Below, piece after piece: positions 29,069 to 56,986 of a stretch of 64,000 bases of DNA (the stretch's first letter is position 1; the number at the start of each line of letters is the position of its first letter). The notes below the pieces were generated by a model. The model ran no database searches. It was not told the DNA's origin and worked only from the letters and a program-made list of their open reading frames with translations. Position numbers and translations under genes: made by a program. The stretch spans positions 124,001 to 188,000 of the IMG/VR virus record IMGVR_UViG_3300045125_000071. One strand, given 5' to 3'.

Positions 29069-29113
29069 GATTTTCTCTAGTTTCAAAGTGCTATGATAAA
29101 ACTAGAGAAAATC
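29069..29113. repeat. cassette palindrome 2
   Basis: GATTTTCTCTAGTTT-N15-AAACTAGAGAAAATC (compensatory change in both arms). Confidence 0.95.
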
Positions 29114-29255
29114 TCGGAAGCCCCAGATTCCTCCTCGGTTGGTTTAACAATACATTAGCGATGTATTAACATGATATTAGCAAAAGGTGAGCGTATCTTT
29201 GTGGCTCACCTAAACCACCGCATGAGTCGAGCGGTTCACCAAACGACACCACACC

Positions 29256-29699
29256 ATGGCAAACCCAATGCCCGCTGCTTCTCTCCTGCACCTGATTTCC
29301 GAAGAAACCAAAGAACTGAAGGGCGCACCCTTCACCGTGCGTTCCAAGCGCACGGGCGTAGACTTCACCTACAAGGTGACCCAGTCCGTTTTCAAGGACG
29401 TGCGCTACTTTCACGTCAAGGTCGAGAAGATGCTTGATGGCATCCTCGGCTTTTACTACCTCGGCTACTTCCGTGCCGATGAGGGGAAGATTTTTGCCAA
29501 AGGTCGTGTGCCCGTGGAAACCCCTTCTGCCCTCGCCATTGGCTGGGTGCTGCGCAAGGCATTCGCAAAGGATGCTGCTGCGCTTGATGAGGGCGTGGAA
29601 GCGTTCAACCTCGGTTCGTGCTGCGTGTGTGGTAAGCGTCTGTCCGATGCTCGTAGCATCGAGTTGGGTATTGGTCCCGTCTGCCGTGGTGAGCGTTAA
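29256..29699 (+). CDS. DUF6011-like zinc-finger domain protein
   Basis: C-terminal CCVCGKRLSDARSIELGIGPVC. Confidence 0.7.
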   Translation: MANPMPAASLLHLISEETKELKGAPFTVRSKRTGVDFTYKVTQSVFKDVRYFHVKVEKMLDGILGFYYLGYFRADEGKIFAKGRVPVETPSALAIGWVLRKAFAKDAAALDEGVEAFNLGSCCVCGKRLSDARSIELGIGPVCRGER

Positions 29700-29935
29700 T
29701 CGCTTTCATCCCCGATATTGAAACCCCGTCCATGTGACGGGGTTTTTTGTTTCTATCCCTAAACGAATTTAAAGCCTTTTACGGGCGTTTCTTGTTCCAA
29801 TAGTATCCTACTATTGTTTTCTGATTATCGTCTATTGTAGGGGGTTCTAAAACGATTAAGCAAAACGGACAACCAAAACGTGGGAACAGACATTCTTGCT
29901 GTGAGGCTGAAGCGACGGGACGCTTCCCCAGTTCG

Positions 29936-29980
29936 GATTTTGTCTAGTTTTATGTTATTGTTGTGAAACTAGACAAAATC
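29936..29980. repeat. cassette palindrome 3
   Basis: Consensus arms, N15. Confidence 0.95.
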
Positions 29981-30123
29981 TTGCCGCCCGTACCTGCTGA
30001 GCGATGGGGTTTGTCTTTAACAATACATTAGCAATGTATTAACATTTTATTTGGAAATTGTGTGCGTATCTTTGTGGCTCACCTAAACCACCGCATGAGC
30101 CGAGCGGACAAACGGCACACACC

Positions 30124-30495
30124 ATGGGTCTTGATATGTACATTCAGCGCCGAGTTAATGGCGGTCAGTCCGAGCAGGTTGGCTACTTTCGGAAATTCTA
30201 CGCCCTCCATGATTGGATTGGCATTCATGTGGGTGAGGTTGAGAACCTTGCCCCCGTTGTCCTGTCCGAGGAAGTCCTTCAGAACTTGTCCATGACGTTG
30301 GAAAATGTCATGGATTGTCCCGAATTGGCTCGCCTGACCTTTCCACCCGAAAAGAACTACGGGGATATTGACCCGTGGTATTTCCATCGGGTCGGAACTG
30401 CCTTGGAGTTGGTGTGGAAACTCCGTATGGAGGCTTCCGTTGCCCTTCAAGAGCGTGGCGAAGTCCACGAACTTGAATATGTGGCGTGGTGGTGA
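30124..30495 (+). CDS. MGLDMY-family phage protein (paralog of 53013)
   Basis: MGLDMY...VGYFRKFYALHDWI...YVAWW. Confidence 0.8.
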   Translation: MGLDMYIQRRVNGGQSEQVGYFRKFYALHDWIGIHVGEVENLAPVVLSEEVLQNLSMTLENVMDCPELARLTFPPEKNYGDIDPWYFHRVGTALELVWKLRMEASVALQERGEVHELEYVAWW

Positions 30496-30717
30496 CCTTG
30501 CCCGTATCCCACAAAGCCCGTCCGATGTGACGGGCTTTTTTATTTTCATCCCTTACCCAATTTCAAGCCCATTACGGGCTTTTTTCATTACTGATGGTAT
30601 CTACATATCACCCGAAGATTATCGTTCAATTTTGGGCGTTATAATGCGTTTAAGCAAATGGTCATCCAAAACGTGGGAACAACGATTTCCCTGGCGACGG
30701 GACGCTTCCCCAGTTCG

Positions 30718-30765
30718 GATTTTGTCTAGTTTTAGATTTTAATAGTTTCAAAACTAAACAAAATC
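30718..30765. repeat. cassette palindrome 4
   Basis: N18, right arm AAACTAAACAAAATC. Confidence 0.95.
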
Positions 30766-30959
30766 TGCCCGTCCAAAGCCAGGTCGCAGACTGCCAAAAT
30801 CCTTTAACAATACATTAGCACATCATTAACATTATATTTGCATATTGCACCCTATCTTTGTTGCAGTTCTTTGATAGACGGACTATCTTACATAGCCTTG
30901 CAGGTGCAAGGTGGGTAGATGATATTTTAACTTTTTTTCACCTAAAAAAACCTAAACAC

Positions 30960-31556
30960 ATGGCACAGAAAGTTCAAATGAGCGTACTTGATTTCGTATT
31001 ATTTATGCTCCGTTTCACGCACCGCCACATGGCAGGATTGACCGCTGAAACCTGCCTTGATAATGCCCAAATGAAGGGTGGTAAAGCCACCGCTGCAAAG
31101 TATGGTGGTTATGTCACGAAGTTGTCACGGATAACGTGGAATCACTCCGTGGACTACGAAAACGCAGTCAAAAACAAACTTGTAAAGTTTGGTCTTGACC
31201 CCGAAGCGTTTATCGCAGGTGAGCATAGGTTTGCAAAACGTGCGCTTTGTGACGGAAAGTTGACCACTATGGCTTATCACAAAGATGATGAACATCTACC
31301 TATATCCGAGCGTAGGTGGTATCTTGTGGCTTACATCATGGACGGCATCGTAAAAAGCAAATATGCTTACACGGATGCCAACGGCAACGAAGTTGATGCT
31401 GATACGCTCCATGCCGACCTTTATGATAAGCGTTCACGCAAACAAGCGGATGCAGGTCTAACGGAAATTGAGCAGCAGGTAATCTATCGGAATTATTCGG
31501 TGGAAAATTTGCGGAACATTCGCTTTGAAGGCTACGATATTGACATCGTGCAGTAA
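30960..31556 (+). CDS. hypothetical phage protein
   Basis: Start MAQKVQMSV after a CCTAAACAC leader; terminator follows. Confidence 0.8.
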   Translation: MAQKVQMSVLDFVLFMLRFTHRHMAGLTAETCLDNAQMKGGKATAAKYGGYVTKLSRITWNHSVDYENAVKNKLVKFGLDPEAFIAGEHRFAKRALCDGKLTTMAYHKDDEHLPISERRWYLVAYIMDGIVKSKYAYTDANGNEVDADTLHADLYDKRSRKQADAGLTEIEQQVIYRNYSVENLRNIRFEGYDIDIVQ

Positions 31557-31648
31557 TACAATGCCACCCGAAAGGGTGGCATTTTTTTTGGCTAAAATTT
31601 AACGTTAACAAACCCTTAACAATCGGAAAATCTGGCTGCCACCGTTCG

Positions 31649-31693
31649 GATTTTGTTTAGTTTTAGATTGGTATTACAAAACTAGACAAAATC
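31649..31693. repeat. cassette palindrome 5
   Basis: Left arm GATTTTGTTTAGTTT, N15. Confidence 0.95.
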
Positions 31694-31819
31694 TGCGCTG
31701 GGGACGCTGGCTGAGGCACGGGTGGGTTGCGCTTTAACATATGATTAACCCCAAGTATTATGTGGGGATGAATATGCGATGTATATTTGCTTATTCAATC
31801 ACCCCTAAATCTTTAAGTC

Positions 31820-32109
31820 ATGCAAATTAATGGTTCTTACGCCCTCCCAAGCATCTTCAATGTTTCAGTTGAATTCAGTGACAACAGGAACATCACCTAC
31901 AAGGTAGAAGCCGACATCGAAAAAAGGAAGTCGCTATTTCCGTGGATTTGGCTGATGGCACTTTCACGGATGCGGAACGTGAGGAAGGTGCGAATTTCAT
32001 CTGTGCGAGTCTTGTGGATGGCTCTTTACATCTGCCCTCGTTCATCCCTCTGTCCGATGTGGAGGACATTGAGCAGTGGGATGGCATCCATGAGGCTCTC
32101 CAAGCCTGA
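31820..32109 (+). CDS. paralog of 28699 protein (frameshift in A-run at ~31920)
   Basis: Shifted frame gives EEGANFICASLVDGSLHLPSFIPLSDVEDIEQWDGIHEALQA*, which aligns to 28699. Confidence 0.8.
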
Positions 32110-32206
32110 CAATCCTCGAAACGGATTCGATGCCCGACCGAAAGGTTGGGCATTTTTTGCGCTTGAGTGGCGGAAGTTCTGGATACCTGCTGGTTCCCAG
32201 TCAGAG

Positions 32207-32251
32207 GATTTTGTTTAGTTTTAGAAGGGTATTACAAAACTAGACGAAATC
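32207..32251. repeat. cassette palindrome 6
   Basis: N15, right arm AAACTAGACGAAATC. Confidence 0.95.
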
Positions 32252-32384
32252 CAACAGGTGACAGCCAGGAAGTGTGCAACGTATTTGCGGTGGATATGTT
32301 GTGAAAACATTAACATTATATTTTTGGTTATGGTCATGTTCTTTGTATATTTGATTATTATTACACCTTAAACCTTTAATCGTT

Positions 32385-32711
32385 ATGAACAACTACATCA
32401 TCATCAGTCGCACCTTTGTTGAGGTTACCCCCGATAGCGCAGAGGACGGGGAATTTTCCGACCACGGCTTCATTGACGAGCGTGTTGAGGTCACCTTCCC
32501 CGAATTGGTAGACCTCATGTACGAACACTGCCACCCCTCATGTTCCCCCAATGACGGAGGAACGGATGTATGGTACTCAACCGAGATGTACACTTCCGAT
32601 TTTGGGGATGGAACGAACCGCCAAGAAAGCATCCACTTCCATAAGGATAACACCCCGAACATCGCCAAATATTGGAAAATGGCGGCAAGGGCGGCAGGAC
32701 TTGTGGAGTAG
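32385..32711 (+). CDS. hypothetical phage protein
   Basis: 108 aa between promoter and terminator. Confidence 0.8.
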   Translation: MNNYIIISRTFVEVTPDSAEDGEFSDHGFIDERVEVTFPELVDLMYEHCHPSCSPNDGGTDVWYSTEMYTSDFGDGTNRQESIHFHKDNTPNIAKYWKMAARAAGLVE

Positions 32712-32789
32712 TCGCCCACCACCCCCGAACATCCCAGCAGAGATGCTGGGATTTTTTTGCTCTAATAGAACTTCAGGCCCACAGCTCCA

Positions 32790-32838
32790 GATTTTATCTA
32801 GTTTTAAAACTAATCGTATTACAAAACTAGACGAAATC
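32790..32838. repeat. cassette palindrome 7
   Basis: N19. Confidence 0.95.
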
Positions 32839-32967
32839 TACCCGTCCCGCGTGCCTCAAGTGCCTGAAGTACCACTTGTTCCCCTTTGTGATAACATTAA
32901 CAATCAATTTGATTGTTTTTAGTTTATGTGGTGTATATTTGCTTATTCAATCACCTAAACCAATTTT

Positions 32968-33084
32968 ATGAAGCACTTTATTTTTCTTCTCATTCTTACG
33001 GCTATTTATTTCATTTTGTTTCTCACAATTTTTCTGCCATATTTCTTGTGGCATTTCAAAAACACCCCCAACTCGCTCATGTGA
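32968..33084 (+). CDS. small membrane peptide (38 aa)
   Basis: MKHFIFLLILTAIYFILFLTIFLPYFLWHFKNTPNSLM, directly after promoter. Confidence 0.6.
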   Translation: MKHFIFLLILTAIYFILFLTIFLPYFLWHFKNTPNSLM

Positions 33085-33154
33085 ATAAGGGTTACATTCA
33101 GAAAGTAAGAAAAGTTTTCATAAACGATTCAAAACGCCCCCAAACTTTCTGAAC

Positions 33155-33286
33155 ATGAAAAAAATCATCTTCCTTCTGTTCGTATCCATTTTTTTTGCAT
33201 CTTGCATGACCACTCGCACAAAAGTCGGTGGGTGCTACTACTACTATCGACCGAGCATGAAAAACGCCAAATGGCGTTATCTATAA
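33155..33286 (+). CDS. small lipoprotein (43 aa)
   Basis: MKKIIFLLFVSIFFAS-C signal peptidase II lipobox; terminator follows. Confidence 0.7.
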   Translation: MKKIIFLLFVSIFFASCMTTRTKVGGCYYYYRPSMKNAKWRYL

Positions 33287-33372
33287 TTTTCATATGGCAA
33301 GCATCGTTCCCCCTGACATTTCCATGTCGGGGGTTTTTTTGTCCACCAGCATAACCTGGCTGGATGAATCTG

Positions 33373-33417
33373 GATTTTGTCTAGTTTTACAACAGTATTG
33401 CCAAACTAGACGAAATC
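33373..33417. repeat. cassette palindrome 8
   Basis: N15. Confidence 0.95.
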
Positions 33418-33531
33418 TGGAGCTGTTCGAGTCGTCCCTCAACAGTTCGAGACGTTATGAGAACATTAACACTCGATTTGTTTGTGTTTCGGTATTTATC
33501 AGTATATTTGTATAACAAAACACAATACGCC

Positions 33532-33693
33532 ATGAAAAAAGATTATCTACTACGGATTTCCATGTTGCTTCTGCACACCATCTATGTGCTGACCGCTTTT
33601 CCCATCTTGGTATTACAATCCATATGGAAATGGAAGGTGGAATTATTGGATAACCTTTTTACAATTACTTCAGACATTGGCGCATCCTTCTAA
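33532..33693 (+). CDS. small membrane protein (53 aa)
   Basis: One TM helix; lies between promoter and terminator. Confidence 0.65.
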   Translation: MKKDYLLRISMLLLHTIYVLTAFPILVLQSIWKWKVELLDNLFTITSDIGASF

Positions 33694-33839
33694 AAATGTT
33701 CTTCAAGGAGCGTGAACCCAATAGTTACGCAAACTATTATCAGCACATCAGTTTAAAATAGTTCAAGGGTTATAGGTGAAACCCCGTCCGAAAGGGCGGG
33801 GATTTTTTGCCCTGAAGAATACGGCGGCTTCCCTGGTGA

Positions 33840-33884
33840 GATTTTGTCTAGTTTCAAAGTGTTATGATAAAACTAGACGAAATC
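33840..33884. repeat. cassette palindrome 9
   Basis: N15. Confidence 0.95.
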
Positions 33885-33993
33885 TGACCTGATGCGGGCT
33901 GGACCTGCTGGTGGTGGGTATCTTGTGAAAACATTAACATTTGAAAACATCGTATTACCGATATGGGGTGTATATTTGCATAAACAATAAGAC

Positions 33994-34179
33994 ATGAAAC
34001 TGAATATCGCAACAAAACTGAACGAACTTCAAGAGGAGGTTCTGAAAATTGAAAACGAGGATGCCCGTCACTTTGAAATCAAAGAAATTGCCGAGATGGT
34101 AACGGCATGGTATGATGGAAATGTCGAGAGGCGCAGAAGGATTGCAGAAGAAAAAAACTTCACCAAACAACACCAGTAA
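33994..34179 (+). CDS. hypothetical protein
   Basis: Follows promoter. Confidence 0.7.
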   Translation: MKLNIATKLNELQEEVLKIENEDARHFEIKEIAEMVTAWYDGNVERRRRIAEEKNFTKQHQ

Positions 34180-34180
34180 T

Positions 34181-34339
34181 ATGCACATCACAAGACATCG
34201 CACGAAACTCGCATGGAGGTGCTTCAAAAAGTATCTTCAAGACAAAAGCATCCCAAATGTGTTCGCTCGTGTTTATTGGGCGTTCATGTCCGCACGTTGG
34301 TATTTCCTTTATCCCAAATGTAGTTTCCAAAAAGATTAG
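34181..34339 (+). CDS. small basic protein (52 aa)
   Basis: MHITRHRTKLAWRCF...; coupled to upstream stop. Confidence 0.55.
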   Translation: MHITRHRTKLAWRCFKKYLQDKSIPNVFARVYWAFMSARWYFLYPKCSFQKD

Positions 34340-34437
34340 GGTTTAGGTGTTTTTTCATAGGTTAGCAATCATCCCCCGACATTTCCATGTCGGGGATTTT
34401 TTTGCTCAGCCAATGAAGTCCTGGTTTCCCCGTGTAA

Positions 34438-34482
34438 GATTTTGTCTAGTTTTAAAAACGTATTACAAAACTAGACAAAATC
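34438..34482. repeat. cassette palindrome 10
   Basis: Consensus arms, N15. Confidence 0.95.
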
Positions 34483-34592
34483 TGACCTGATGCTGTGCAG
34501 GTAGGTTGCACAGCAAAACGGTTTAACAACGTGTTAACAACATCATTCGGATATGGGGTGTATATTTGCATAAACATTAAAACCTAAACACT

Positions 34593-34918
34593 ATGCCCTA
34601 CATCAGCGAGAAAAAACATGGATTAAGACAGACGGTTGGAGAGGTTACGTTCAACCCGTCAATGCGGTGGGATGCTGCAACTGCACAGGGGATTGGAGTG
34701 ATTCACCCTGCCCCACAAGTGTGGTCTTGGAGGAAATCAACGGTTTCAAAAAACTGTTGAAGGCAAACGGCATCCAACACAAAAGAGTGGTAACACAATC
34801 GAGCAACGTGTTCATGGTGAAGGTGAACATATTGGTTCACCCGAACGACAGGGAACGCGCCTTGGAATTGGCAAAAGAGCATGAGCAAAACACCCGACTA
34901 TTCTATCGGGTGTCATAA
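34593..34918 (+). CDS. hypothetical Cys-rich protein (frameshift in A-run)
   Basis: MPYISEKK joins TWIKTDGWRGYVQPVNAVGCCNCTGDWSD... Confidence 0.7.
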
Positions 34919-35021
34919 GATGGTGTTTTTTCATAGGTTAGCAACCCCCCGATGTTTCCACATTGGGGGTTTTTTTGTCCGTCTGGAGGAGGTTCTGGTA
35001 CCTGCTGGTTTCCAGTCAGAG

Positions 35022-35069
35022 GATTTTGTTTAGTTTTGAAACTAGTGGAATATAAAACTAGACAAAATC
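35022..35069. repeat. cassette palindrome 11
   Basis: N18. Confidence 0.95.
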
Positions 35070-35186
35070 TTACCAGAAGCGGGCTGGCTCCTCCTGAACA
35101 CGGGCTTTAACATAACATTAGCAATCGGAATGTTCGGTATTACGTTATCCGTTGTATATTTACATATCACCAAAAACAAAAAACAC

Positions 35187-35522
35187 ATGACAACTGCAAT
35201 CGCTCAAACCTGCAACCAACTCGGCAAAAGGGAATTTGACCCTGCCGAAACTTTGGCGTACTTCAAGGCTCACGGCTTTCTCTTTTGGTCGTGGGGTGCT
35301 TCAAAATTCACCAACTTCAATAACTTGGGGTTGTGCTTCAAAGTGAATGGGCATCACCACAAGGGGTACGTTTTCGTGGCTCTTGATTGGTCGGACACCT
35401 TCGATGTCCATATCATCAACACGCAAGGTCGGGTGCTTGACACCTACAATGAGGTTTACATTGACGAACTTTTCAACGTCATTGACAACCGAATTGAGAA
35501 GATAAAGGACTACGTGCGATAA
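35187..35522 (+). CDS. hypothetical phage protein
   Basis: WSWG...GL.FKVNG..HKG.V...DTFDV...VYIDEL...ID..IE. Confidence 0.8.
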   Translation: MTTAIAQTCNQLGKREFDPAETLAYFKAHGFLFWSWGASKFTNFNNLGLCFKVNGHHHKGYVFVALDWSDTFDVHIINTQGRVLDTYNEVYIDELFNVIDNRIEKIKDYVR

Positions 35523-35585
35523 CTCAAACCGCCCCCGATGTAATGTCGGGGGTTTTTTCTATTTTTGTTAAATAAATCTAATATC

Positions 35586-35855
35586 ATGGAACTTGTAGCA
35601 ATTATCATATCATTGTTGTTAGTAATCCTTTATTTATATGCTCGTTATGTTGAATTAAAACATGTGAAAAATTTAAAAGATGAATATATTCTTTCGTTAG
35701 AGGATTTTGTCGATAAACAAAAGATTCATATTAACACATTAGAGGAACTGGTTAGTGTGTATAGACAAAAAGATAAATATAATGAAGATGTCATACAGGC
35801 AAAAGATGGTATAATTAAAGCGTATGAAACACAGGATAAATATTATTTGAATTAA
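35586..35855 (+). CDS. membrane-anchored coiled-coil protein
   Basis: MELVAIIISLLLVILYLY TM helix; AT-rich compared with neighbours. Confidence 0.65.
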   Translation: MELVAIIISLLLVILYLYARYVELKHVKNLKDEYILSLEDFVDKQKIHINTLEELVSVYRQKDKYNEDVIQAKDGIIKAYETQDKYYLN

Positions 35856-35920
35856 ATTTGGTTTGTAAATATAAACGTATTACCTTTGCAACATATTAAT
35901 AACAATTAAAAATAAAAAGT

Positions 35921-36298: not shown

Positions 36299-36393
36299 GA
36301 CATAGTGTTTTTCATAGGTTAGCAATCACCCCCTGACATTTCCATGTCGGGGGTTTTTTTGCTCAGTACTCTTGGCTCGTGCGTCCCAGTCGG

Positions 36394-36442
36394 GATTTTG
36401 TCTAGTTTTAAAACTAATCGTATGACAAAACTAGACAAAATC
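36394..36442. repeat. cassette palindrome 12
   Basis: Consensus arms, N19. Confidence 0.95.
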
Positions 36443-49834: not shown

Positions 49835-49854
49835 TTCAAATAAAAACAAACAGA

Positions 49855-50541: not shown

Positions 50542-50624
50542 TGTTGTTGTGTGTTTTGTTTATCCCCATCCGAAAGGGTGGGGATTTTTTGTCCTTCAGG
50601 TTTCTCCTGGCTAATTAGCGGCTG

Positions 50625-50667
50625 GATTTTGTCTAGTTTTGTGTGTGATATAAAACTAAACAAAATC
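50625..50667. repeat. cassette palindrome 20
   Basis: N13. Confidence 0.95.
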
Positions 50668-50759
50668 TTTCCAGGTTGGTTGGCTAATTCTTCAGATAAA
50701 AAAAATTTTTGGTTATGTAAATAAAAGTTGTATATTTGCTGAAACAAAAACCAAACACA

Positions 50760-51275
50760 ATGAAAATCGAATTAAAAAACGTCAAGTTCTCCGAGTTCGC
50801 ATCCGAGGAAACCAACTGCTTCGCTGCCGACCTTTATGTGGATGGTAAGAAGGTTGGATTCTGCAAGAATGATGGTCATGGTGGTAACACCTGGGTTTAC
50901 AATTCCGATGCAAATACGCTGACCAAATTCCGTGAGGTTGAAGAATATTGCAAGACGCTTCCGCCAATTGAATTCGGTGATTTTTCAATTCCATCCAATT
51001 TGGAAAATGTTGTCGATGGTTTGTTCGAAGAGTGGTTGAAAGAGAAAGACAAAAAACGGATGCAAAAGAAGTTGGAGAAGTCCATGCTCAAAGGCATCTG
51101 CATTGAAACCGAGAATGGTTTCACGTTGGCAACATTCAAGATGGTTGGCAAGGTTGTCCCATTGGCTGATGCGTTAAAGGTTCAGCCAGTCCTCGAACAC
51201 ATCAAACAATTCTGTATTACAGAGAAGCAAAAAGGGAATAAAATTCTGAATACAAATTTGCCTTTTGAAATATAA
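50760..51275 (+). CDS. hypothetical phage protein
   Basis: LKNVK..EF.SEET.CF.A.LY.DGKK.G...NDG.GG. Confidence 0.8.
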   Translation: MKIELKNVKFSEFASEETNCFAADLYVDGKKVGFCKNDGHGGNTWVYNSDANTLTKFREVEEYCKTLPPIEFGDFSIPSNLENVVDGLFEEWLKEKDKKRMQKKLEKSMLKGICIETENGFTLATFKMVGKVVPLADALKVQPVLEHIKQFCITEKQKGNKILNTNLPFEI

Positions 51276-51304
51276 TTGTATTACCTTTACATAAACAATA
51301 CACT

Positions 51305-51559
51305 ATGTCATTGAAAGATGCTTTTACAACGGAATTAATTCGCGAACTCAGGAACAGGGGTGTAATCAACATCCTGTGGACGAATGAAGATATTATCGAA
51401 ACGGCAAAAAATCTTGAAGTCGAATTGACGGATGAAGAGATTGATGATGTTACCACATTGATGGAAGAAAAACATGATGCCAATTATGGTGTCAACTGGT
51501 CATTCATTGAGGAATGTATTTGGCAAGTTATTGATAACCGAAAAAAATCAAAAACATGA
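51305..51559 (+). CDS. hypothetical protein
   Basis: W..EDI......LTDEE...V......HDA..GV.W. Confidence 0.75.
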   Translation: MSLKDAFTTELIRELRNRGVINILWTNEDIIETAKNLEVELTDEEIDDVTTLMEEKHDANYGVNWSFIEECIWQVIDNRKKSKT

Positions 51560-51760
51560 GCAAAAAAACATACGAAGTTTCTTTTGCAACTCTCCGTTCA
51601 GGCAGAGAATCCGCTTGAGGCAGCGAAAGAGGCCAATAGATTAGCCTTCAATGAAGGTGACACATTCATCTACGATGTTGAAGACGAAGAGACGGGCGAG
51701 AAGTTCACCGTAGATTTGTCCGAAAACGATGAGGATGCAGTTTTACCCAACAACGATTAA
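51556..51760 (+). CDS. small acidic protein (frameshifted)
   Basis: MSKKTYEV...VQAENPLEAAKEA... read by eye. Confidence 0.55.
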
Positions 51761-51767
51761 ATTTCAT

Positions 51768-52166
51768 ATGAAAACAAAAATCGTAACAACACAAGCAATT
51801 CGTGAAACCGCATACGACATCGCGGAAGAAATGACTGAAATGTTGGGAACGGAATTCACGGTCACCCTTGTCGAGGGTATGCCACTTGGTGACTATTACC
51901 GCATCGAAGGAGAGATAACTGCGGAACAGTTCGAGGAAATGCCTGACATCGAGAACGAATGGCTTTTCGAGAACCCGACCAACGAATGGGTGTCGAAGTT
52001 CGGGAAACTTAGCGATACCGAATATTCCAAGACAATCAAGGATACTGTTTTCTACTACAACACCTATTTGTTTGGTGGGAGTCATTATCAGATACTAGTA
52101 AGTGGTGAAATGGGTGGCAAGTACGATGTGGAAGAACCCGAAGATATTGCGAGAATATCAAGATAA
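51768..52166 (+). CDS. hypothetical acidic protein
   Basis: Start MKTKIVTT; terminator follows. Confidence 0.7.
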   Translation: MKTKIVTTQAIRETAYDIAEEMTEMLGTEFTVTLVEGMPLGDYYRIEGEITAEQFEEMPDIENEWLFENPTNEWVSKFGKLSDTEYSKTIKDTVFYYNTYLFGGSHYQILVSGEMGGKYDVEEPEDIARISR

Positions 52167-52251
52167 TTTGTGTTTTGTGTTTTGTGCTCCCCCGCTGTTT
52201 TTACGGCGGGGGTTTTTGTTCCCGCTGTACGCCCGCCGAGCCAACTGTTCG

Positions 52252-52298
52252 GATTTTGTCTAGTTTTAAAATCGCGTATGACAAAACTAGACAAAATC
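52252..52298. repeat. cassette palindrome 21
   Basis: Consensus arms, N17. Confidence 0.95.
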
Positions 52299-52378
52299 TT
52301 TTCAGGGACACCAGGCCCAAAAATTTTTTGGTATATCAGAAATAATGTATTACCTTTGTGTTCTAAAACACACACATC

Positions 52379-52681
52379 ATGCAAGACGAAAAAACAGTTG
52401 AAATCGTTAATCAGATTACCAATTATGTGAATACCTTTTCCAGAAGGGATGATTTCAATAAGGTAATGTCCACGGAACATCGCACTCTGCAACAATCTTT
52501 CACACGTTTGTGCCTGAAATGGTTGGAACACGTTGCTCAAGATGAATATAAGACAGACCCACGGAATGAAGCCAGCAAGAGTACTGCAAAAGAATTGATA
52601 TCAAAGTTCAGAGAAGAGAAAGGATTTTTACCGTCAGAATTTTTACCTTTGTGTAAAAAATATTTGGTGAACAAAAAATAA
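52379..52681 (+). CDS. hypothetical protein
   Basis: HRTLQQSFTRLC motif; follows promoter. Confidence 0.75.
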   Translation: MQDEKTVEIVNQITNYVNTFSRRDDFNKVMSTEHRTLQQSFTRLCLKWLEHVAQDEYKTDPRNEASKSTAKELISKFREEKGFLPSEFLPLCKKYLVNKK

Positions 52682-52712
52682 CTTTATACTTTTACATTCT
52701 AAAACATACACA

Positions 52713-52988
52713 ATGACAAATTTGGAAAATTACGATTTTGAAATGTTTTCCCCTGCTGGGAACAAAGCCTGTCAAAGTCTTGTAAAGAAGGTATTCAGGA
52801 AGATTGAAGGCAAGACAAGGCTTACCGAAGATGATGTCTATAAACACATCAGAGAAGGTATTAAGAAGGTTAAGGAAAAACATTCTGAAGTGTATGACAG
52901 CGAACCAGGTTGGCACATCCAAGAATGGGTGAATAAGAAACTGAAAGAGGTTGGCTATGGCTTCGAGGTATCAAGGTACGATTTCTAA
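52713..52988 (+). CDS. hypothetical protein
   Basis: ORF track, in operon. Confidence 0.7.
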   Translation: MTNLENYDFEMFSPAGNKACQSLVKKVFRKIEGKTRLTEDDVYKHIREGIKKVKEKHSEVYDSEPGWHIQEWVNKKLKEVGYGFEVSRYDF

Positions 52989-53012
52989 TAAACAAAACAA
53001 AAACCTACAACT

Positions 53013-53585
53013 ATGGGATTGGATATGTATCTGAACAAGCGCACCTACGTTAAGAACTGGTCGCACATGGATAAGAGTGAATTGCACACGGTGACCATCA
53101 AAATGGGTGGTAAGAAAAGGGCTGACATTAAGCCCGAACGCGTGTCTTACATTATCGAGGAGGTCGCCTATTGGCGCAAATTCAACGCTCTGCATGGGTG
53201 GTTTGTCACCAATGTTGCCGATGGTGTTGACGACTGCAAGGAGGTCTATGTTTCTCATGAAAATTTGATGGAGTTACATGAGACCCTTCTGAAAGTTCAG
53301 GAAATCCTGAACGCTGCGCCCACCGTACAAAGGGAGGTCTCAAACGGGTGGCAAACGGATGGAAATGGCGGGATAAAGGAAACCACGGCTATGATACTTG
53401 TTTACGATTGTGAGGAAGAAATCAATGAGGTGTTACCGCCGACCCCAGGTTTTTTCTTTGGAAGCCAAGAAATCGATGGATGGTTCAAACAGAATGTTGA
53501 CGAAACGGTTACCGTAATCGGTGACATTCTGAAAGAAATCGAATTCGGTTATTCATCAGATTATTATTACGAGGCATCGTGGTAA
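53013..53585 (+). CDS. MGLDMY-family phage protein (paralog of 30124)
   Basis: MGLDMYL...EVAYWRKFNALHGWFV...LP...GFFFGS...YYEASW. Confidence 0.85.
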   Translation: MGLDMYLNKRTYVKNWSHMDKSELHTVTIKMGGKKRADIKPERVSYIIEEVAYWRKFNALHGWFVTNVADGVDDCKEVYVSHENLMELHETLLKVQEILNAAPTVQREVSNGWQTDGNGGIKETTAMILVYDCEEEINEVLPPTPGFFFGSQEIDGWFKQNVDETVTVIGDILKEIEFGYSSDYYYEASW

Positions 53586-53635
53586 ACGGTGGGGAGCAAT
53601 CCCCACCTTTTTTCATTTCATAAAACTTAAAACAC

Positions 53636-53983
53636 ATGAAAACATTGAACGAACTGAAAGAACAATTGCAAGAGGATATTATCACCTATCTTGATGACAT
53701 CGTGGCTGAAGATGAGGTAACCGAATTGTGTCAAAAAGTGGTAAACAGGGTTAACGAACTAAAACATAATATTCAAACAGAATACAGAGTATATTGTATT
53801 GACATGGATGATGATGAATTATATGCCGAAGATTTCGACGGTGTATGGGATTTGTCAGACGAAAAATTCATTGAACACGCTGAAAGGCAAGGTCTTGTAT
53901 GGTCTCTGGAAGGTTTCCAAGAAGCGTTCAATCAGGACGGTGTATCCGATACATGGATTATGCGTATTATCAAACATTCATAA
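53636..53983 (+). CDS. hypothetical acidic protein
   Basis: F...AE.QG.VWSL.GF. Confidence 0.7.
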   Translation: MKTLNELKEQLQEDIITYLDDIVAEDEVTELCQKVVNRVNELKHNIQTEYRVYCIDMDDDELYAEDFDGVWDLSDEKFIEHAERQGLVWSLEGFQEAFNQDGVSDTWIMRIIKHS

Positions 53984-53995
53984 ATTCAAACAAAT

Positions 53996-54193
53996 ATGGC
54001 CAAAAGATACCAGGTCATTTCGCCAGACGGGTTCACCATCGAATTCGATGTGTGGGCATATCCATCAAAGAAAAAGGCAAAAGAGGCTTTTGAGAAGTGG
54101 AAGGAAAGATATACCAGACAAGGATATTATTCATCCGTGAAGTATGGTAGAATTCCTTTAGCCGAATTGGAAAATTATTGTCAAATTGGATAA
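53996..54193 (+). CDS. hypothetical protein
   Basis: V.SPDG..I...; R...QGYYSS...IPL. Confidence 0.7.
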   Translation: MAKRYQVISPDGFTIEFDVWAYPSKKKAKEAFEKWKERYTRQGYYSSVKYGRIPLAELENYCQIG

Positions 54194-54205
54194 AATTAAA
54201 ACAAA

Positions 54206-54391
54206 ATGAAACTTCGTAACTACATCCTGACTCTGGACGCAAAAGTTCAAAACCTTTACAAGAATACGATTGAGACAATGCATATGCAAGCATATAATTT
54301 GCGTGATGCAAAGGTGAAATCTTCAAGAATTGCACGTGATTACAACATGAAAGTTGTAAGTGTAAAACTGAACAGAGCGATTCATTTTTAA
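54206..54391 (+). CDS. hypothetical protein
   Basis: ORF track, in operon. Confidence 0.65.
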   Translation: MKLRNYILTLDAKVQNLYKNTIETMHMQAYNLRDAKVKSSRIARDYNMKVVSVKLNRAIHF

Positions 54392-54403
54392 ATTATAAAC
54401 ACA

Positions 54404-54778
54404 ATGAAAAAGATTCTTGAAAAAATCAGAAAAGCTTACGAGAAACACGGACAGGCTGCGGCTTTCGATGTCGCCAACGAACATGGGTTGAAGTACGAGT
54501 ACTGTTGGACTTGTGAAACGTCAAGCCCCGCTGTTGACCATCAATGTGCTATCTGTGGATGCGACACAACAACGCGTATGACACATACCGAGTTTTTCGA
54601 AAGAACGGATTACATTACTCTGGGACAGCAGAAGCTAACGCTGTTGGCTATTCTGGATAAAGGTGGATTGCACTCAACCCAGGTCGAAGACATTGAAGGA
54701 TTAATAAATTTCATCGACAGCTTTCAAGACACAGCCATTGATAATGGTATGAAAGAAGAAGATGTTTTTATAAATTAA
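54404..54778 (+). CDS. hypothetical protein with CxxC...CxxC
   Basis: YEYCWTCE...CAICG. Confidence 0.7.
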   Translation: MKKILEKIRKAYEKHGQAAAFDVANEHGLKYEYCWTCETSSPAVDHQCAICGCDTTTRMTHTEFFERTDYITLGQQKLTLLAILDKGGLHSTQVEDIEGLINFIDSFQDTAIDNGMKEEDVFIN

Positions 54779-54828
54779 ATTTGCGTAATTGATATAAACG
54801 TATTACCTTTATACCAAAATTCAGAAAC

Positions 54829-55029
54829 ATGGCACTCAAAAAACACATTCCAACAATCGAAGACAGAATCCAAGAAAGGAAAGATGTTCATGCAATGTTG
54901 AAGACATCGATGAAAGAAGTAAAAAGTCTTATCAATTGCCTGGATAAAATCGACGAGCAAATAAAAAAATTGGAAAAAAGAAAACGAAAAAAAGAAAGTG
55001 TGAACCAAAGTTCAAAAAGATTGTTCTAA
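54829..55029 (+). CDS. small coiled-coil protein
   Basis: ORF track. Confidence 0.6.
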   Translation: MALKKHIPTIEDRIQERKDVHAMLKTSMKEVKSLINCLDKIDEQIKKLEKRKRKKESVNQSSKRLF

Positions 55030-55056
55030 ATAAGTAACCAACAAAAACCAGATAAA

Positions 55057-55329
55057 ATGAAAGTACAAGTAGTTTGCAAAGTTCCGAGCGGACATCAGCC
55101 AAAACCAGTCAAAATTCTTTGCGGTGGCTGCAAGAAAAACCCCGATGGTTCGTTTTCATTTGAAATGGAATTCGATACCAAGGTTGATGCAACCCAATGG
55201 TTGTATGATAGGGCATATGAAATCGCAAAAGATGATAAGGAACTCAAGCGGCTCAATTCGCAAATCAGGGTTCACAAGAAACTGAGCTATGATGTTGCGA
55301 CAGCAAAAATCATGCGTGTCAAAAACTAA
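55057..55329 (+). CDS. hypothetical protein
   Basis: ORF track. Confidence 0.65.
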   Translation: MKVQVVCKVPSGHQPKPVKILCGGCKKNPDGSFSFEMEFDTKVDATQWLYDRAYEIAKDDKELKRLNSQIRVHKKLSYDVATAKIMRVKN

Positions 55330-55331
55330 TC

Positions 55332-55514
55332 ATGTCAAAAAGAGTTATCAAGTACGAAGTAATCGTCTGTGGTGAGGTCATCAAGGTCGAAAACCTAAAA
55401 GAGGCTGAGGACAGGTTGAAGAGGCACGAACTATCGGACTTCGCACCATCCTACATCCTCCGAAAGGAGTTCTCCCAGAAAGGGAATTTGCTGGATGTGA
55501 TAATGGTGGGTTAA
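55332..55514 (+). CDS. hypothetical protein
   Basis: ORF track; terminator follows. Confidence 0.6.
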   Translation: MSKRVIKYEVIVCGEVIKVENLKEAEDRLKRHELSDFAPSYILRKEFSQKGNLLDVIMVG

Positions 55515-55674
55515 CTCATTGCGGATGGGTTCATGAGGACAAGGAGATGCCGAAAGGTGTCTCCTTTTTTATGAAATTATTATCAAATATTTTGTTAATG
55601 TGGAAAAGATTATATATTTTTGCACGTACAATACACAATATGTTGATATTTTTGCACAAGTAAATCAAATCAAA

Positions 55675-55905
55675 ATGAGTAAAGCCGAAACCGTAAACCT
55701 AACAGACAAGTTGAACAGAAAACACATACGACTTGTCCTGTCCGATGACGGAAAGGGCGTATGGGAACGATGGGAGTCAAAGGACAAACATAAGTGGGTT
55801 AAAACCCATGAATCTCTTTCTGTTCAAAATGTTATCAAGGAACAGGAGGAAGTTAAAACCCGAAACTATTTCAATCTATTCAGAATAATCTTTTCCAAAC
55901 GATAG
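55675..55905 (+). CDS. hypothetical protein
   Basis: Start MSKAETV; terminator follows. Confidence 0.6.
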   Translation: MSKAETVNLTDKLNRKHIRLVLSDDGKGVWERWESKDKHKWVKTHESLSVQNVIKEQEEVKTRNYFNLFRIIFSKR

Positions 55906-56001
55906 TTCTGTGAGATAGCTATTGTTGGTTTTAGTTCGAAAGCCCCGCAGTTTTGTGGGGCTTTTTTATTTGTTCGAGAGTCGTCCTGGTTAACAGCTCC
56001 A

Positions 56002-56043
56002 GATTTTGTCTAGTTTTGGAACGATTTAAAACTAGACAAAATC
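56002..56043. repeat. cassette palindrome 22
   Basis: Consensus arms, N12. Confidence 0.95.
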
Positions 56044-56111
56044 CATCCAGGGAAAAAATTTTGCATATCAAAGTATTATTTGTATATTTGTGTAAACAAA
56101 ACATATCACAT

Positions 56112-56872
56112 ATGAAGTTTAAATCAATTGCGGAAGCCAAGAGACAAACGGGCTTATCTTACCTGGGCAATGTTAACCACAGCGCAAAGCATGAAAAGAA
56201 CGCGAAGTACAATGAGCTTGTATATGCATTATATCTGGCTCCAGCTAAGCTGTCTGGTTACAATGTTTGTCCAAAGTCGAACGCCGAATGTCGGTTATTA
56301 TGTCTGAATGAAAGCGGACAAAATAAGATGGACAAGGGGAATATCAATAATGCCCGAATCAAAAAAACAAAACTGTTTTTCGAGGACAGACAGTTTTTCA
56401 TGGAATGGCTGGTGGCTGAAATCAAACGCTACAAAACCAAAGCCAAAACGATGGGGTATCATTTCAGCATTCAGATTGAATAATACGTCGGATATCAGTC
56501 CCGAACAATTTCATATGGAAATCGATGGGGAACGGAAAAATATACTACAGCTGTTTCCCAGATGTACAGTTTTACGATTATACCAAAGTGGACAATCGAA
56601 TTGACATTGTCAACAAACATACCAACTATGACCTTACCTTCTCGTATGACGGGTACAATTGGGAGGTCTGTGAAAAGATGCTGAAGAACAATGTTCGGGT
56701 GGCGGTTGTCTTCGCAAAGCAACTTCCTGAACAATGGCGGGGACATAACGTCATCAGCGGGGACGACTACGATGTGCGCTTCCGTGACGACAGGAACGTC
56801 ATTGTCGGCCTGAAGTTCAAGCAGGTACGGAACAAGTATACCAAGGACATGAAGTTCGTGGTGCAGGACTAA
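56112..56872 (+). CDS. GP88-like protein (mycobacteriophage gene product 88 family; frameshifted)
   Basis: LYLAPA..SG.NVCP....C...CL..SG; RLN.TSDI; FYDYTK; YDLTFS; D..D.RF.D...VGLK.K. Confidence 0.7.
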
Positions 56873-56939
56873 CGGTTCAGGGATAATGGTCCATCCCCCA
56901 GGAAAAACCTGGGGGATTTTTTTATCTCAGCACGAGCAA

Positions 56940-56986
56940 GATTTTGTCTAGTTTTAAAACCGCGTATGACAAAACTAGACAAAATC
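56940..56986. repeat. cassette palindrome 23
   Basis: Consensus arms, N17. Confidence 0.95.

What the first reader, a model, noticed from the sequence alone, without database searches (positions are those of the whole stretch)
29069..56986. Left flank, spacer and right flank assort independently between copies, placing crossovers at the palindrome
Seen in sequence: copies 6 and 11 share the left flank and arm (TACCTGCTGGTT(C/T)CCAGTCAGAGGATTTTGTTTAG), but copy 6 shares its right side with copy 15 (AAACTAGACGAAATCCAACAGGT..CAGCCAGG). Copies 3 and 4 share ~40 bp of left flank but differ on the right, and copy 3's right flank matches copy 1 (GCCGCCC..GTACCTGCTGA). Spacers pair differently again: 2/9 (CAAAGTG(C/T)TATGATA), 7/12 (TAAAACTAATCGTAT(T/G)ACA), 21/23 (TAAAA(T/C)CGCGTATGACA). 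Left flanks pair 7/22 and 12/14; right flanks pair 9/10. Promoter blocks pair 1/5/7, 2/3, 9/10 and 14/16. Inference: this mosaic is the pattern expected if exchanges happen at the arms.
Basis: partly seen in the sequence, partly recalled or inferred. Interest (0 to 1): 0.85.

Follow-up and report, generated by a model that had tools for sequence, protein, structure and literature searches.

The report
Phage gene cassettes swapped at palindromes
A 30-kb stretch of an uncultured giant phage genome is a row of small self-contained gene cassettes joined by one conserved palindrome, and comparison within the genome and with related phages shows that cassettes are gained, lost, replaced and flipped exactly at those palindromes.

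Summary
There are 22 full palindromes (16-nt arms GATTTTGTCTAGTTTT / AAAACTAGACAAAATC, spacer 8-17 nt) plus one right-arm-only site at 28563. Each sits between a rho-independent terminator and a Bacteroidota-type promoter.

No unit pair that shares a left flank shares the adjoining spacer (0 of 9). For right flanks it is 2 of 14, below chance, and no pair shares both flanks. Linkage survives across another conserved block, the -7 promoter box (OR 7.6, p=0.007), and across whole cassettes (Mantel r=0.41, p=0.0002).

The window is part of a 251-kb viral contig. Four same-lineage relatives (L113-L116) show single-cassette indels, replacements and an inverted cassette, with a palindrome or solo arm at the junctions resolved. 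Their arms differ by compensatory double changes.

The closest known kind is the PeSL "mobile regulatory cassette" of T4-type phages, here in a new three-part form. The best mechanism is homology-driven exchange funnelled to the arms, the longest identity shared by modules. A dedicated hairpin-specific enzyme is not excluded. No recombinase was found in the window.

Unexplained extra: the motif GTAT(T/G)AC, present in many loops, is about 10-fold enriched on the coding strand of the array.

The parts
28413..28562 (+). Left boundary of the array: A/T-rich then G-rich stretch with two AGGTAGGTAGGG repeats. GC rises here from about 0.27 to about 0.42.
   Evidence: This stretch is 78-90% identical in relatives L113 (reverse-complemented, 192-315), L114 (8151-8306) and L115 (1248-1353). 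In L114 it follows the same lysozyme-containing backbone.
28563..28577 (.). Unit 1: right arm only (half-site) at the array start
   Evidence: L114 also starts with a solo right arm; L113 and L115 go from the boundary straight to a promoter.
29069..29113 (.). Unit 2 palindrome. It carries the compensated pair C7:G7' and shares its spacer with unit 9.
29936..29980 (.). Unit 3 palindrome. 41 nt of left flank plus left arm are identical to unit 4; the spacer is roughly the reverse complement of the unit 8 type.
   Evidence: (D2, I15)
30718..30765 (.). Unit 4 palindrome. The spacer is the reverse complement of the unit 19 spacer and holds a degenerate extra arm. The right arm has the A9' allele, giving a C.A hybrid.
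   Evidence: (I2, 98%)
31649..31693 (.). Unit 5 palindrome. Left arm has the T9 allele (T.G hybrid); the loop ends in GTATTAC.
32207..32251 (.). Unit 6 palindrome. Left flank plus arm are shared with unit 11; right arm plus flank are shared with unit 15.
32790..32838 (.). Unit 7 palindrome. The spacer is shared with unit 12 (18 of 19 nt). The loop string AATCGTATTACA is identical to a loop in L030.
33373..33417 (.). Unit 8 palindrome
33840..33884 (.). Unit 9 palindrome (spacer shared with unit 2)
34438..34482 (.). Unit 10 palindrome
35022..35069 (.). Unit 11 palindrome (three-arm type; left arm has the T9 allele)
   Evidence: (I6)
36394..36442 (.). Unit 12 palindrome
38223..38264 (.). Unit 13 palindrome. 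Its left flank is the reverse complement of the right flank of unit 15 (88% over 40 nt).
   Evidence: (I22)
39044..39088 (.). Unit 14 palindrome
41511..41550 (.). Unit 15 palindrome (8-nt spacer)
42076..42117 (.). Unit 16 palindrome
43272..43311 (.). Unit 17 palindrome (8-nt spacer)
44910..44956 (.). Unit 18 palindrome
46791..46838 (.). Unit 19 palindrome (three-arm type, the inverse of unit 4)
   Evidence: I2
50625..50667 (.). Unit 20 palindrome (right arm has the A9' allele)
52252..52298 (.). Unit 21 palindrome. It is 46/47 identical to unit 23, with unrelated flanks on both sides.
   Evidence: (D1)
56002..56043 (.). Unit 22 palindrome
56940..56986 (.). Unit 23 palindrome, the last one
28578..60200 (+). 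Cassette array, all genes on the + strand. Each cassette runs right arm, variable flank, TTTAACA..ATTAAC block, promoter (TTTG / TAnnTTTG), 1-10 small genes, GC-rich terminator, variable flank, left arm. Genes with a family hit: DUF6011 29256-29699, SprT-like 39214-39681, DUF4241 43410-43910, DUF932 45083-45919, SAM lyase 46232-46705, DUF6915 48776-49093, GP88 in two ORFs 56112-56872, bPH_2 59207-59644. Most have no hit.
   Evidence: TAnnTTTG 56 on + against 25 on -; 40 terminator-like sites against 20.1 expected, the strong ones on + just upstream of the palindromes
47177..48118 (-). Endonuclease gene of HNH / zinc-finger type on the opposite strand, GC 0.27, inside cassette 19. It lies in a segment (about 47197-48775) that relatives lack. 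It is probably a free-standing homing endonuclease and is not shown to be part of the mechanism.
   Evidence: DUF4379; phrog_681 3e-47, phrog_559 HNH; flanking genes are adjacent in L030; no homologue in 80 loci

Best explanation
This region is the hyperplastic accessory-gene region, presumably early-expressed, of an uncultured jumbo phage whose promoters have the Bacteroidota consensus. It is built from self-contained cassettes (own promoter, one or a few small genes, own terminator). Neighbouring cassettes are joined by one conserved palindrome, so each cassette ends in the same 16-bp sequence in inverted orientation. Cassettes are exchanged, deleted, duplicated, moved and inverted by recombination whose junctions fall in these arms and, less often, in the promoter or terminator blocks.

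The most likely mechanism is homology-dependent recombination or template switching, by phage or host machinery, during replication or co-infection. It would be funnelled to the arms because they are the longest stretch of identity that any two modules share. Arms in direct orientation would give deletion or insertion, and arms in inverted orientation would give inversion.

The arms are kept identical within a genome and complementary to each other, through compensatory changes between lineages. This points to some DNA-level function (a hairpin or cruciform, or a symmetric binding protein) that is not identified.

Shown: the anatomy, the loss of linkage across the arms, cassette-level differences from relatives, and covariation of the arms. 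Inferred: the homology-driven mechanism, early expression, and the host phylum.
For: Anatomy.

Modules: the whole terminator-palindrome-promoter module (about 250 bp) is homologous among units at about 65% identity.

Linkage: lost across each arm (0/9 and 2/14; no pair shares both flanks). Kept across the -7 box (OR 7.6, p=0.007) and across cassettes (Mantel r=0.41, p=0.0002, against 0.17 across the palindrome; controls at i+2 and i-1 not significant).

Identity: arms are the longest shared exact identity. The median longest common run is 16 nt (left arm) and 11 nt (right arm), against 8 nt in either flanking module. Runs of at least 15 nt occur in 62% and 41% of unit pairs at the arms, against 9% and 5% in the modules.

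Same-lineage relatives (67-78% nt identity): c5 and c8 are exact one-cassette indels. c1 and c3 are replaced. One cassette is inverted with solo arms at its ends (L113), and another is moved and inverted (L116). One protein family (c1, c5, cY, cZ, L116 864-1154) sits in different slots.

Second lineage (L035 against L048, 92% identity): about ten indels are all flanked by module repeats. One extra cassette is inserted exactly at the junction of left arm and loop. One reciprocal right-flank swap has its junction in the right arm.

Family level: gene order is shuffled around a conserved 4-gene core in 80 loci.

Arm covariation: position 13 is T:A (26) or G:C (14); position 15 is T:A (36) or C:G (4); neither has a mismatch. 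Position 9 is C:G or T:A between lineages, and the five hybrids all lie in the window.

Precedent: PeSL elements recombine in this way in T4-type phages, with crossovers mapped in the loop, the AT-rich part and the promoter (PMC2839356; PMC4122927).
Against: Sixteen nucleotides is a short substrate for homologous recombination.

Passive homology does not explain why the junction element is a palindrome, why its arms covary, why each lineage has its own stem, or why loops share GTAT(T/G)AC across lineages with unrelated stems.

The array is markedly GC-richer than the 28 kb to its left (0.42 against 0.27), which fits an open cassette pool better than purely internal shuffling.

The Mantel contrast is clear with Pearson correlation but not with rank correlation (0.25 for both).

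Only 64 of the contig's 251 kb could be read, so a trans-acting enzyme cannot be excluded.

No experiment exists. Expression timing and host are inferred from sequence consensus only.
Confidence: 0.55

Rival explanations
1. A dedicated structure- or site-specific system works like an integron but is not one. A phage-encoded enzyme, for example an HUH-type nickase or another hairpin-binding recombinase, would recognise the palindrome as a hairpin or cruciform with a lineage-specific stem and a conserved GTAT(T/G)AC loop. It would excise and insert cassettes there, perhaps as single-stranded circles.
For: Arms stay strictly complementary through compensatory changes and are lineage-specific, while the loop motif is conserved across unrelated stems. 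Spacer length varies from 8 to 17 nt (up to 30 in relatives), which suits a loop and not a rigid dimer site on B-DNA. The motif abuts the 3' side of the loop, as the nonanucleotide does in CRESS-DNA virus origins (own knowledge; resemblance only). The array starts with a half-site at a conserved boundary. The spacer correlates weakly with the upstream cassette and not with the downstream one (r=0.13-0.16, p=0.02-0.05, against r=0.00). The cassettes are GC-richer than the neighbouring backbone.
Against: No integrase, HUH, transposase or resolvase family was hit in about 85 ORFs of the window. Only 8 of 22 loops carry the exact motif, and 39 of its 47 coding-strand copies lie outside hairpins. 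In the run-length test the spacer is unlinked from both flanks. Junctions in relatives also fall at promoter and terminator repeats. Flanks of one unit, or of one cassette, are not complementary, unlike attC. There are no target-site duplications.
Confidence: 0.2
2. The palindrome is only a regulatory or insulating element, such as an operator for a phage regulator of the cassette promoters or a barrier to read-through. The mosaic would then reflect strong selection on the arms with fast divergence and gene conversion elsewhere, not crossovers at the arms.
For: The position is constant, between terminator and promoter. The arms are conserved as sequence, not just as pairing. More distant relatives have the promoter repeats without any conserved hairpin, so the hairpin is an add-on.
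Against: The distance from right arm to the -7 box varies from 40 to 97 nt, and the spacer varies by 9 nt, which is poor for a phased operator. Blocks of 24-41 identical nucleotides stop abruptly at an arm (units 3/4, 6/11, 21/23), which divergence cannot produce. Relatives differ by whole cassettes and inversions bounded by arms. A regulatory role and a junction role are not mutually exclusive.
Confidence: 0.12
3. The palindrome (arms plus spacer) is itself a small mobile element, like a REP or MITE, that inserted repeatedly into terminator-promoter gaps. Spacer families would then be element subfamilies and the flanks just target sites.
For: Arm-plus-spacer units 21/23, 7/12 and 2/9 are near-identical with unrelated flanks on both sides. 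Spacers occur in both orientations (unit 4 against unit 19, unit 3 against unit 8).
Against: There are no target-site duplications around the palindrome. Orthologous junctions in other lineages carry a different stem at the same place, for example window u19-u20 against L030 10914-13156, which indicates concerted change rather than independent insertion. Solo arms and half-sites occur at cassette ends. Left-flank-plus-left-arm and right-arm-plus-right-flank blocks also travel without the spacer. The element is confined to this array within the 251-kb contig.
Confidence: 0.06

Closest known systems
PeSL (promoter-early stem-loop) mobile regulatory cassettes of T4-type phages (Arbiol et al. 2010, PMC2839356; Comeau et al. 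2014, PMC4122927)
   Same: Both are repeated composite terminator/promoter modules between small ORFan genes in a hyperplastic region of a large phage. Each gene is transcriptionally insulated. Indels, replacements and displacements between related phages are bounded by the modules. Stem-loop consensus differs between phage lineages. Crossovers are mapped in the loop and in the promoter parts.
   Different: Here the module has three parts: a canonical terminator, a separate perfect palindrome with 16-bp arms and an 8-17 nt spacer, and then a promoter 40-97 nt further on. In a PeSL the stem-loop is the terminator. The promoter consensus is TTTG / TAnnTTTG, not sigma-70. The arms show compensatory covariation. 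Loops carry a motif that is also polar and enriched across the array. No T4 core genes were seen in the window. Mini-circles are untested.
Integron cassette arrays (IntI, attI, attC)
   Same: Both are one-directional arrays of short cassettes separated by imperfectly conserved palindromic sites. Both have a hybrid or half site at the array start, variable cassette content between relatives, and a composition unlike the backbone.
   Different: No integrase is present in the window. The sites lack the R''/L''-L'/R' layout, extrahelical bases and GTTRRRY core. The stems are perfect and the same for all cassettes rather than cassette-specific. Every cassette has its own promoter and terminator. 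The element is on a phage genome.
rAID-1 recombinase-associated arrays of Bacteroidales (Ross et al., bioRxiv 10.1101/471110)
   Same: Both use Bacteroidota-type promoters, repetitive intergenic sequences between many small genes, and skewed GC, and both have been described as reminiscent of integrons.
   Different: rAID-1 is chromosomal, starts with a conserved XerD-family recombinase and holds immunity genes. Here there is no recombinase, no immunity family was hit, and the context is viral.
Stem-loop origins of rolling-circle (HUH Rep) replicons, e.g. the nanovirus/circovirus nonanucleotide TAGTATTAC (own knowledge)
   Same: Both have a hairpin with a lineage-specific stem and a conserved loop motif containing GTATTAC at the 3' edge of the loop. 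Nanovirus components are also roughly 1-kb one-gene units that share a common stem-loop.
   Different: No Rep/HUH gene was found. Only about a third of the loops carry the motif. Most copies of the motif lie outside hairpins. This is a resemblance only.

Membership tests
PeSL-type mobile regulatory cassettes | Repeated composite terminator + promoter module between small genes in a plastic region of a large phage genome | tested here: met
   the source is a 251-kb viral contig.
PeSL-type mobile regulatory cassettes | Insertions, deletions and replacements between related phages are bounded by the modules | tested here: met
   L035 against L048 and L054; window against L113-L116.
PeSL-type mobile regulatory cassettes | Sigma-70-like early promoter, with the stem-loop serving as the terminator | tested here: not met
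   Sigma-70-like sites are not enriched (50 found, 47.3 expected). The consensus is TTTG/TAnnTTTG. The palindrome is separate from the terminator and has no T-run.
PeSL-type mobile regulatory cassettes | Circular cassette molecules formed during infection | not testable with these tools
   This needs inverse PCR or reads from infected cells.
Integron | IntI-type tyrosine recombinase next to the array | tested here: not met
   No integrase family hit in the ORFs flanking or inside the array. The rest of the contig was not readable.
Integron | attC architecture: cassette-specific imperfect hairpin with R''/L''-L'/R' boxes and extrahelical bases | tested here: not met
   Arms are identical and perfect in all units. 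Flanks of one unit or one cassette are not complementary.
Integron | Promoterless cassettes read from a common promoter | tested here: not met
   Each cassette has its own promoter-like block and terminator.
rAID-1 | XerD-family recombinase at the head of the array, on a Bacteroidales chromosome | tested here: not met
   (no recombinase upstream of 28563). The context is viral.
Classical double-strand core site of a tyrosine or serine recombinase | Two inverted binding arms around a spacer of fixed length (6-8 bp or 2 bp) that matches between partner sites | tested here: not met
   Spacers are 8-17 nt, differ in sequence, and reach 30 nt in L113.
HUH nick-site hairpin (rolling-circle origin, IS200/IS605, REP/RAYT) | Hairpin presenting a conserved cleavage motif, together with an HUH enzyme gene | tested here: inconclusive
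   The motif is conserved in loops across lineages, but only in 8/22 loops here. It is mostly outside hairpins. No HUH family hit in the window.
TIR transposon / MITE | Target-site duplication flanking the element | tested here: not met
   No duplication beyond chance, treating either the cassette or the palindrome as the element.

The most novel reading that the evidence does not exclude
The palindromes, with lineage-specific stems and the shared polar motif GTAT(T/G)AC, are the cis sites of a dedicated gene-cassette exchange platform. This platform would be integrase-less and carried by a clade of uncultured jumbo phages. It would act on folded DNA, and would amount to a phage counterpart of the integron using a different enzyme, possibly a nickase.
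Probability: 0.18. Interest if true: 0.85.

Novelty: new variant of a known kind. Interest (0 to 1): 0.62.

Why it matters
It gives an unusually clean natural record of how large phages trade accessory genes. Insulated one-gene units are joined by a standard connector, with gain, loss, replacement, relocation and inversion all visible among relatives.

It extends the PeSL idea from T4-type coliphages to an uncultured clade, seen here in 80 metagenomic loci on contigs up to 333 kb, with Bacteroidota-type promoters.

It also adds features that PeSLs do not have: a separate perfect palindrome with compensatory arm evolution, and a strand-polar heptamer. These make the question "passive homology or dedicated machinery?" directly testable in metagenome reads.

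The cassettes include likely counter-defence genes (SAM lyase, DUF932, SprT-like), so the array is probably where these phages adapt to host defences.

Tried and rejected
Stop-codon recoding as the reason for short ORFs: no code gave clearly longer ORFs.

Nucleotide similarity to sequenced phages: none. No close cultured relative by protein either.

Pattern scans: the exact palindrome matched only the source contig in IMG/VR and nothing in species genomes or JGI metagenomes. The L113-type pattern gave nothing in genomes and one isolated site in IMG/VR.

attC-like extended hairpins: the flanks of a unit, or of a cassette, are no more complementary than non-cognate pairs.

Known RNA families: none.

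Recombinase hunt: about 85 ORFs were scanned against Pfam or PHROGs. The only nuclease is an HNH-type gene that relatives lack.

Conserved core proteins: PDB sequence search and the ESM Atlas gave only phage hypotheticals.

Target-site duplications: none.

Peptide-coding explanation for GTAT(T/G)AC: rejected, since all three frames are used (13/8/4) and 22 of 47 copies are intergenic.

G.T wobble bias as evidence for a folded coding strand: by my own tally of the listing, 9 against 3 in the window, but the events are not independent, so no weight was given.

Cassette c4 carrying T:A-type arms at both ends as proof that arms travel with cassettes: by a rough estimate of mine this would occur by chance about one time in four, so it is only noted.

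Mantel and run-length tests were used instead.

Full report
**What is there.**

The window is contig positions 124001-188000 of a 251-kb IMG/VR viral contig. The first 28 kb have GC of about 0.27 and carry phage-like genes: a lysozyme, a peptidoglycan-binding chitinase-like lysin, a GlcNAc transferase, a NUDIX protein and a kinase.

At 28.5 kb GC jumps to about 0.42. From there to about 60.2 kb all genes lie on the + strand. In this stretch the 15-nt arm pattern occurs 54 times at up to 3 mismatches, against 6.0 expected. These matches form 22 full palindromes, GATTTTGTCTAGTTTT / spacer of 8-17 nt / AAAACTAGACAAAATC, plus a right arm alone at 28563. Within the contig the palindrome is confined to this array.

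Every palindrome lies 25-45 nt after a strong GC-rich terminator on the + strand. It lies 40-97 nt before a promoter-like block with TTTG and TAnnTTTG boxes. That consensus is the one known from Bacteroidota (own knowledge). Sigma-70-type sites are not enriched.

The whole module of about 250 bp is homologous among units at about 65% identity. The flanks next to the arms are highly variable. They carry loose CCTGG / CCAGG motifs, and some occur in both orientations: the left flank of unit 13 is the reverse complement of the right flank of unit 15.

Cassettes hold 1-10 small genes. The few with family hits are DUF6011, SprT-like, DUF4241, DUF932, a SAM lyase, DUF6915, GP88 (two ORFs) and a bPH_2 protein. 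This is the kind of set seen in early or counter-defence regions.

**Check of the observation.**

Against shuffled sequences (99.9th percentile), the significant pairs are:

| Segment | Pairs |
|---|---|
| Left flank | 6/11, 3/4, 7/14, 7/18 |
| Spacer | 7/12, 21/23, 2/9, and a 5/6/10/14 group |
| Right flank | 6/15, 1/3, 9/11, 12/16, 14/16 |
| Promoter block | 2/3, 9/10, 1/5/7, 13/20; 14/16 in the adjoining block |

The pairs 7/22, 12/14 and 9/10 are short runs of 8-11 nt that abut the arm.

**Is the assortment independent, and are the arms special?**

I measured, for every pair of units, how far identity runs outward and inward from each arm.
- Of 9 pairs that share at least 6 nt of left flank, none shares at least 5 nt of spacer on the other side of the same arm.
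- Of 14 pairs that share right flank, 2 share spacer, where chance predicts 3.3.
- No pair shares both flanks.

As a control I used another conserved block, the 8-nt -7 box. There, 4 of 14 pairs that share upstream sequence also share downstream sequence (OR 7.6, p=0.007). Linkage therefore survives a conserved block in general, but not the arms.

Mantel tests on 100-nt left and 130-nt right modules give r=0.41 (p=0.0002) between the two ends of one cassette, which are 0.5-3.8 kb apart. They give only r=0.17 (p=0.016) across the 45-nt palindrome. Shifted controls are not significant. The rank correlations are equal at 0.25, so the contrast rests on the strongly similar pairs.

Long identical blocks stop at an arm. 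Units 3 and 4 share 41 nt ending one base into the spacer. Units 6 and 11 share 39 nt ending at the junction of arm and spacer. Units 21 and 23 are 46/47 identical in the palindrome, with unrelated flanks on both sides. Spacers also occur flipped: unit 4 against unit 19 at 98%, and unit 3 against unit 8.

**Relatives.**

A DUF932 homologue led to a 333-kb contig (L030). Its array shares 14 genes with the window, largely in the same order, at 33-89% amino-acid identity. It has the same module plan but a different palindrome, with AATGAAYGGCC-type arms. The window cassette u19-u20 matches the L030 cassette between two of its palindromes.

The DUF6915 gene recovered 80 loci on contigs up to 333 kb. 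A 4-gene core is present in more than 70 of them. Other window genes are present in 1-46 loci and in different orders.

Stems differ by lineage: TTCTGTGGC, TTGGTTGGC, TTGTTTGGCAA and TTAGTGGGGCAA. More distant members have the promoter repeats but no conserved hairpin.

L035 and L048 are 92% identical, and about ten indels between them are all flanked by module repeats. One extra cassette sits exactly at a left-arm/loop junction and leaves a solo left arm. The right flanks of two hairpins are swapped between the two phages, with the junction in the right arm. Four indels lie between promoter-block repeats (also 67).

**Same-lineage relatives.**

Homologues of the DUF6011 protein led to four contigs that are 67-78% identical in DNA to the start of the window's array. 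In the maps below, B is the conserved boundary, R and L are solo right and left arms, P is a full palindrome, and rc marks an inverted cassette.

| Source | Order |
|---|---|
| Window | B-R, c1, P, c2, P, c3, P, c4, P, c5, P, c6, P, c7, P, c8, P, c9 ... |
| L114 (same backbone to the left) | B-R, c2, P, cZ, P, c4 |
| L115 | B, cX, P, c2, P, cY, P, c4 |
| L116 | c2, rc(c5-like), P, c4, P, c6 |
| L113 (reverse-complemented) | B, ..., R, R, rc(c2), L, ..., P, P, P, c4, P, c6, P, c7, P, c9, P, c10 ... |

Cassettes c5 and c8 are exact one-cassette differences. One palindrome in L113 joins the tail of c4 to the head of c6, and another joins c7 to c9. Cassette c2 is inverted in L113 and bounded by a solo right arm and a solo left arm, as expected if the arms are the ends of the cassette. 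The products of c1, cY, cZ and L116 864-1154 belong to one protein family placed in different slots. The window's c5 is a frameshifted copy of the same family.

**Arm covariation.**

Over 40 palindromes from the five sources, position 13 is T:A (26) or G:C (14), and position 15 is T:A (36) or C:G (4). Neither position has a single mismatch. Position 9 is C:G or T:A between lineages. Its five mixed cases (C.A in units 4 and 20; T.G in units 5, 6 and 11) all lie in the window, as expected for palindromes whose two arms have different origins. Unit 2 has a compensated C7:G7' pair. Complementarity of the arms is therefore maintained.

The flanks do not take part. Cognate left and right flanks are no more complementary than non-cognate ones. 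Single strands fold into the expected hairpin, with z-scores of -3.4 to -5.8. No Rfam family matches.

**Mechanism.**

Fixed-spacer double-strand core sites of tyrosine or serine recombinases are excluded by the spacer variation. Integron and rAID-1 membership fail on the recombinase, the site architecture and the promoters (10.1101/471110). There are no target-site duplications.

The arms are the longest exact identity that arbitrary modules share: a median of 16 and 11 nt, against 8 nt in the flanking modules. In the lineage where promoter blocks are long and well conserved, several junctions fall there instead. This dependence on local homology, together with the PeSL precedent (PMC2839356, PMC4122927), makes homology-driven exchange the best-supported mechanism.

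It does not explain the palindromic form, the covariation or the shared loop motif. An unidentified DNA-level function, or a dedicated hairpin-directed enzyme, therefore remains open.

**A second signal.**

GTAT(T/G)AC occurs 60 times in the window, against 12.6 expected. In the array (28.5-60.7 kb) there are 47 copies on the + strand and 11 on the - strand. In the first 28 kb there are 2, where I estimate about 9 from base composition. It appears in all three reading frames and in intergenic DNA.

It abuts the right arm in 8 loops, with near-variants in 3-4 more. The same polar enrichment, and the same loop motif, occur in relatives whose stems are unrelated. Some loops carry two copies, and in L076 the motif is flipped. 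A 12-nt loop string, AATCGTATTACA, is shared by unit 7 and an L030 loop. I could not assign it a function.

**Verdict.**

The feature is a new, three-part variant of the PeSL kind of phage regulatory cassette, with the palindrome arms as the main exchange points.

Noticed in passing
window 28500-60700 (+ strand); also L030, L033-L059, L076, L102, L107, L113: The heptamer GTAT(T/G)AC is about 10-fold enriched and strand-polar in the array (47 copies on + against 11 on -). It is scarce in the 28 kb of backbone (2 copies). It occurs in all reading frames, in promoters and in hairpin loops. The same enrichment is seen in relatives whose hairpin stems are unrelated. Its function is unknown; possibilities include a Chi-like signal, a nick site, or a pause or processing signal.
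   Followed up: partly
window 47177-48118 (-), inside segment 47197-48775: A low-GC (0.27) HNH/zinc-finger endonuclease gene lies on the opposite strand, with two small ORFs beside it. It sits between genes that are adjacent in L030 and has no homologue in 80 related loci. It looks like a free-standing homing endonuclease insertion. It contains an internal 162-nt tandem repeat (47523-47684 and 47712-47873).
   Followed up: partly
window 56112-56483 and 56525-56872: The two halves of a GP88-family protein (Pfam profile positions 11-98 and 126-219) lie in two ORFs 41 nt apart. Relatives also hit both halves side by side. This is either a split or broken gene, or a conserved two-ORF arrangement.
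   Followed up: no
window 31820-32218: Cassette c5 is a degraded copy of the c1 gene family. The first 35 or so residues match, then the frame is lost and the ORF runs through its own terminator into palindrome 6. Intact family members sit in other slots in L114, L115 and L116.
   Followed up: partly
window 28530-28562: Two AGGTAGGTAGGG repeats in a G-rich stretch lie directly before the first (solo) arm. This boundary is conserved (78-90% identity) in three relatives, although the first cassette differs. It may mark a fixed array start.
   Followed up: partly
window 30718-30765, 35022-35069, 46791-46838, 32790-32838, 36394-36442: Several spacers contain a degenerate third copy of an arm (three-arm units). 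These could be scars of collapsed neighbouring palindromes.
   Followed up: no
window 48776-49093 and 80 related loci: The DUF6915 protein is 70-90% identical across phages whose neighbouring genes are only 40-58% identical. Such unusually strong conservation suggests a conserved host target.
   Followed up: no
L035, L030 (relatives): In these relatives the left-arm sequence also occurs many times alone and is strand-polar: GTTTGGC is 24 on + against 4 on - in L035, and GACTGGC is 13 against 2 in L030. Some copies appear to lie within genes.
   Followed up: no
window 4739-6604 (-), 11103-12080 (-): The backbone carries glycosylation-type genes: a 621-aa protein with FkbM methyltransferase and HtrL_YibB domains, and a PF11397 GlcNAc transferase (PHROG 24687, E 9e-141).
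   Followed up: no
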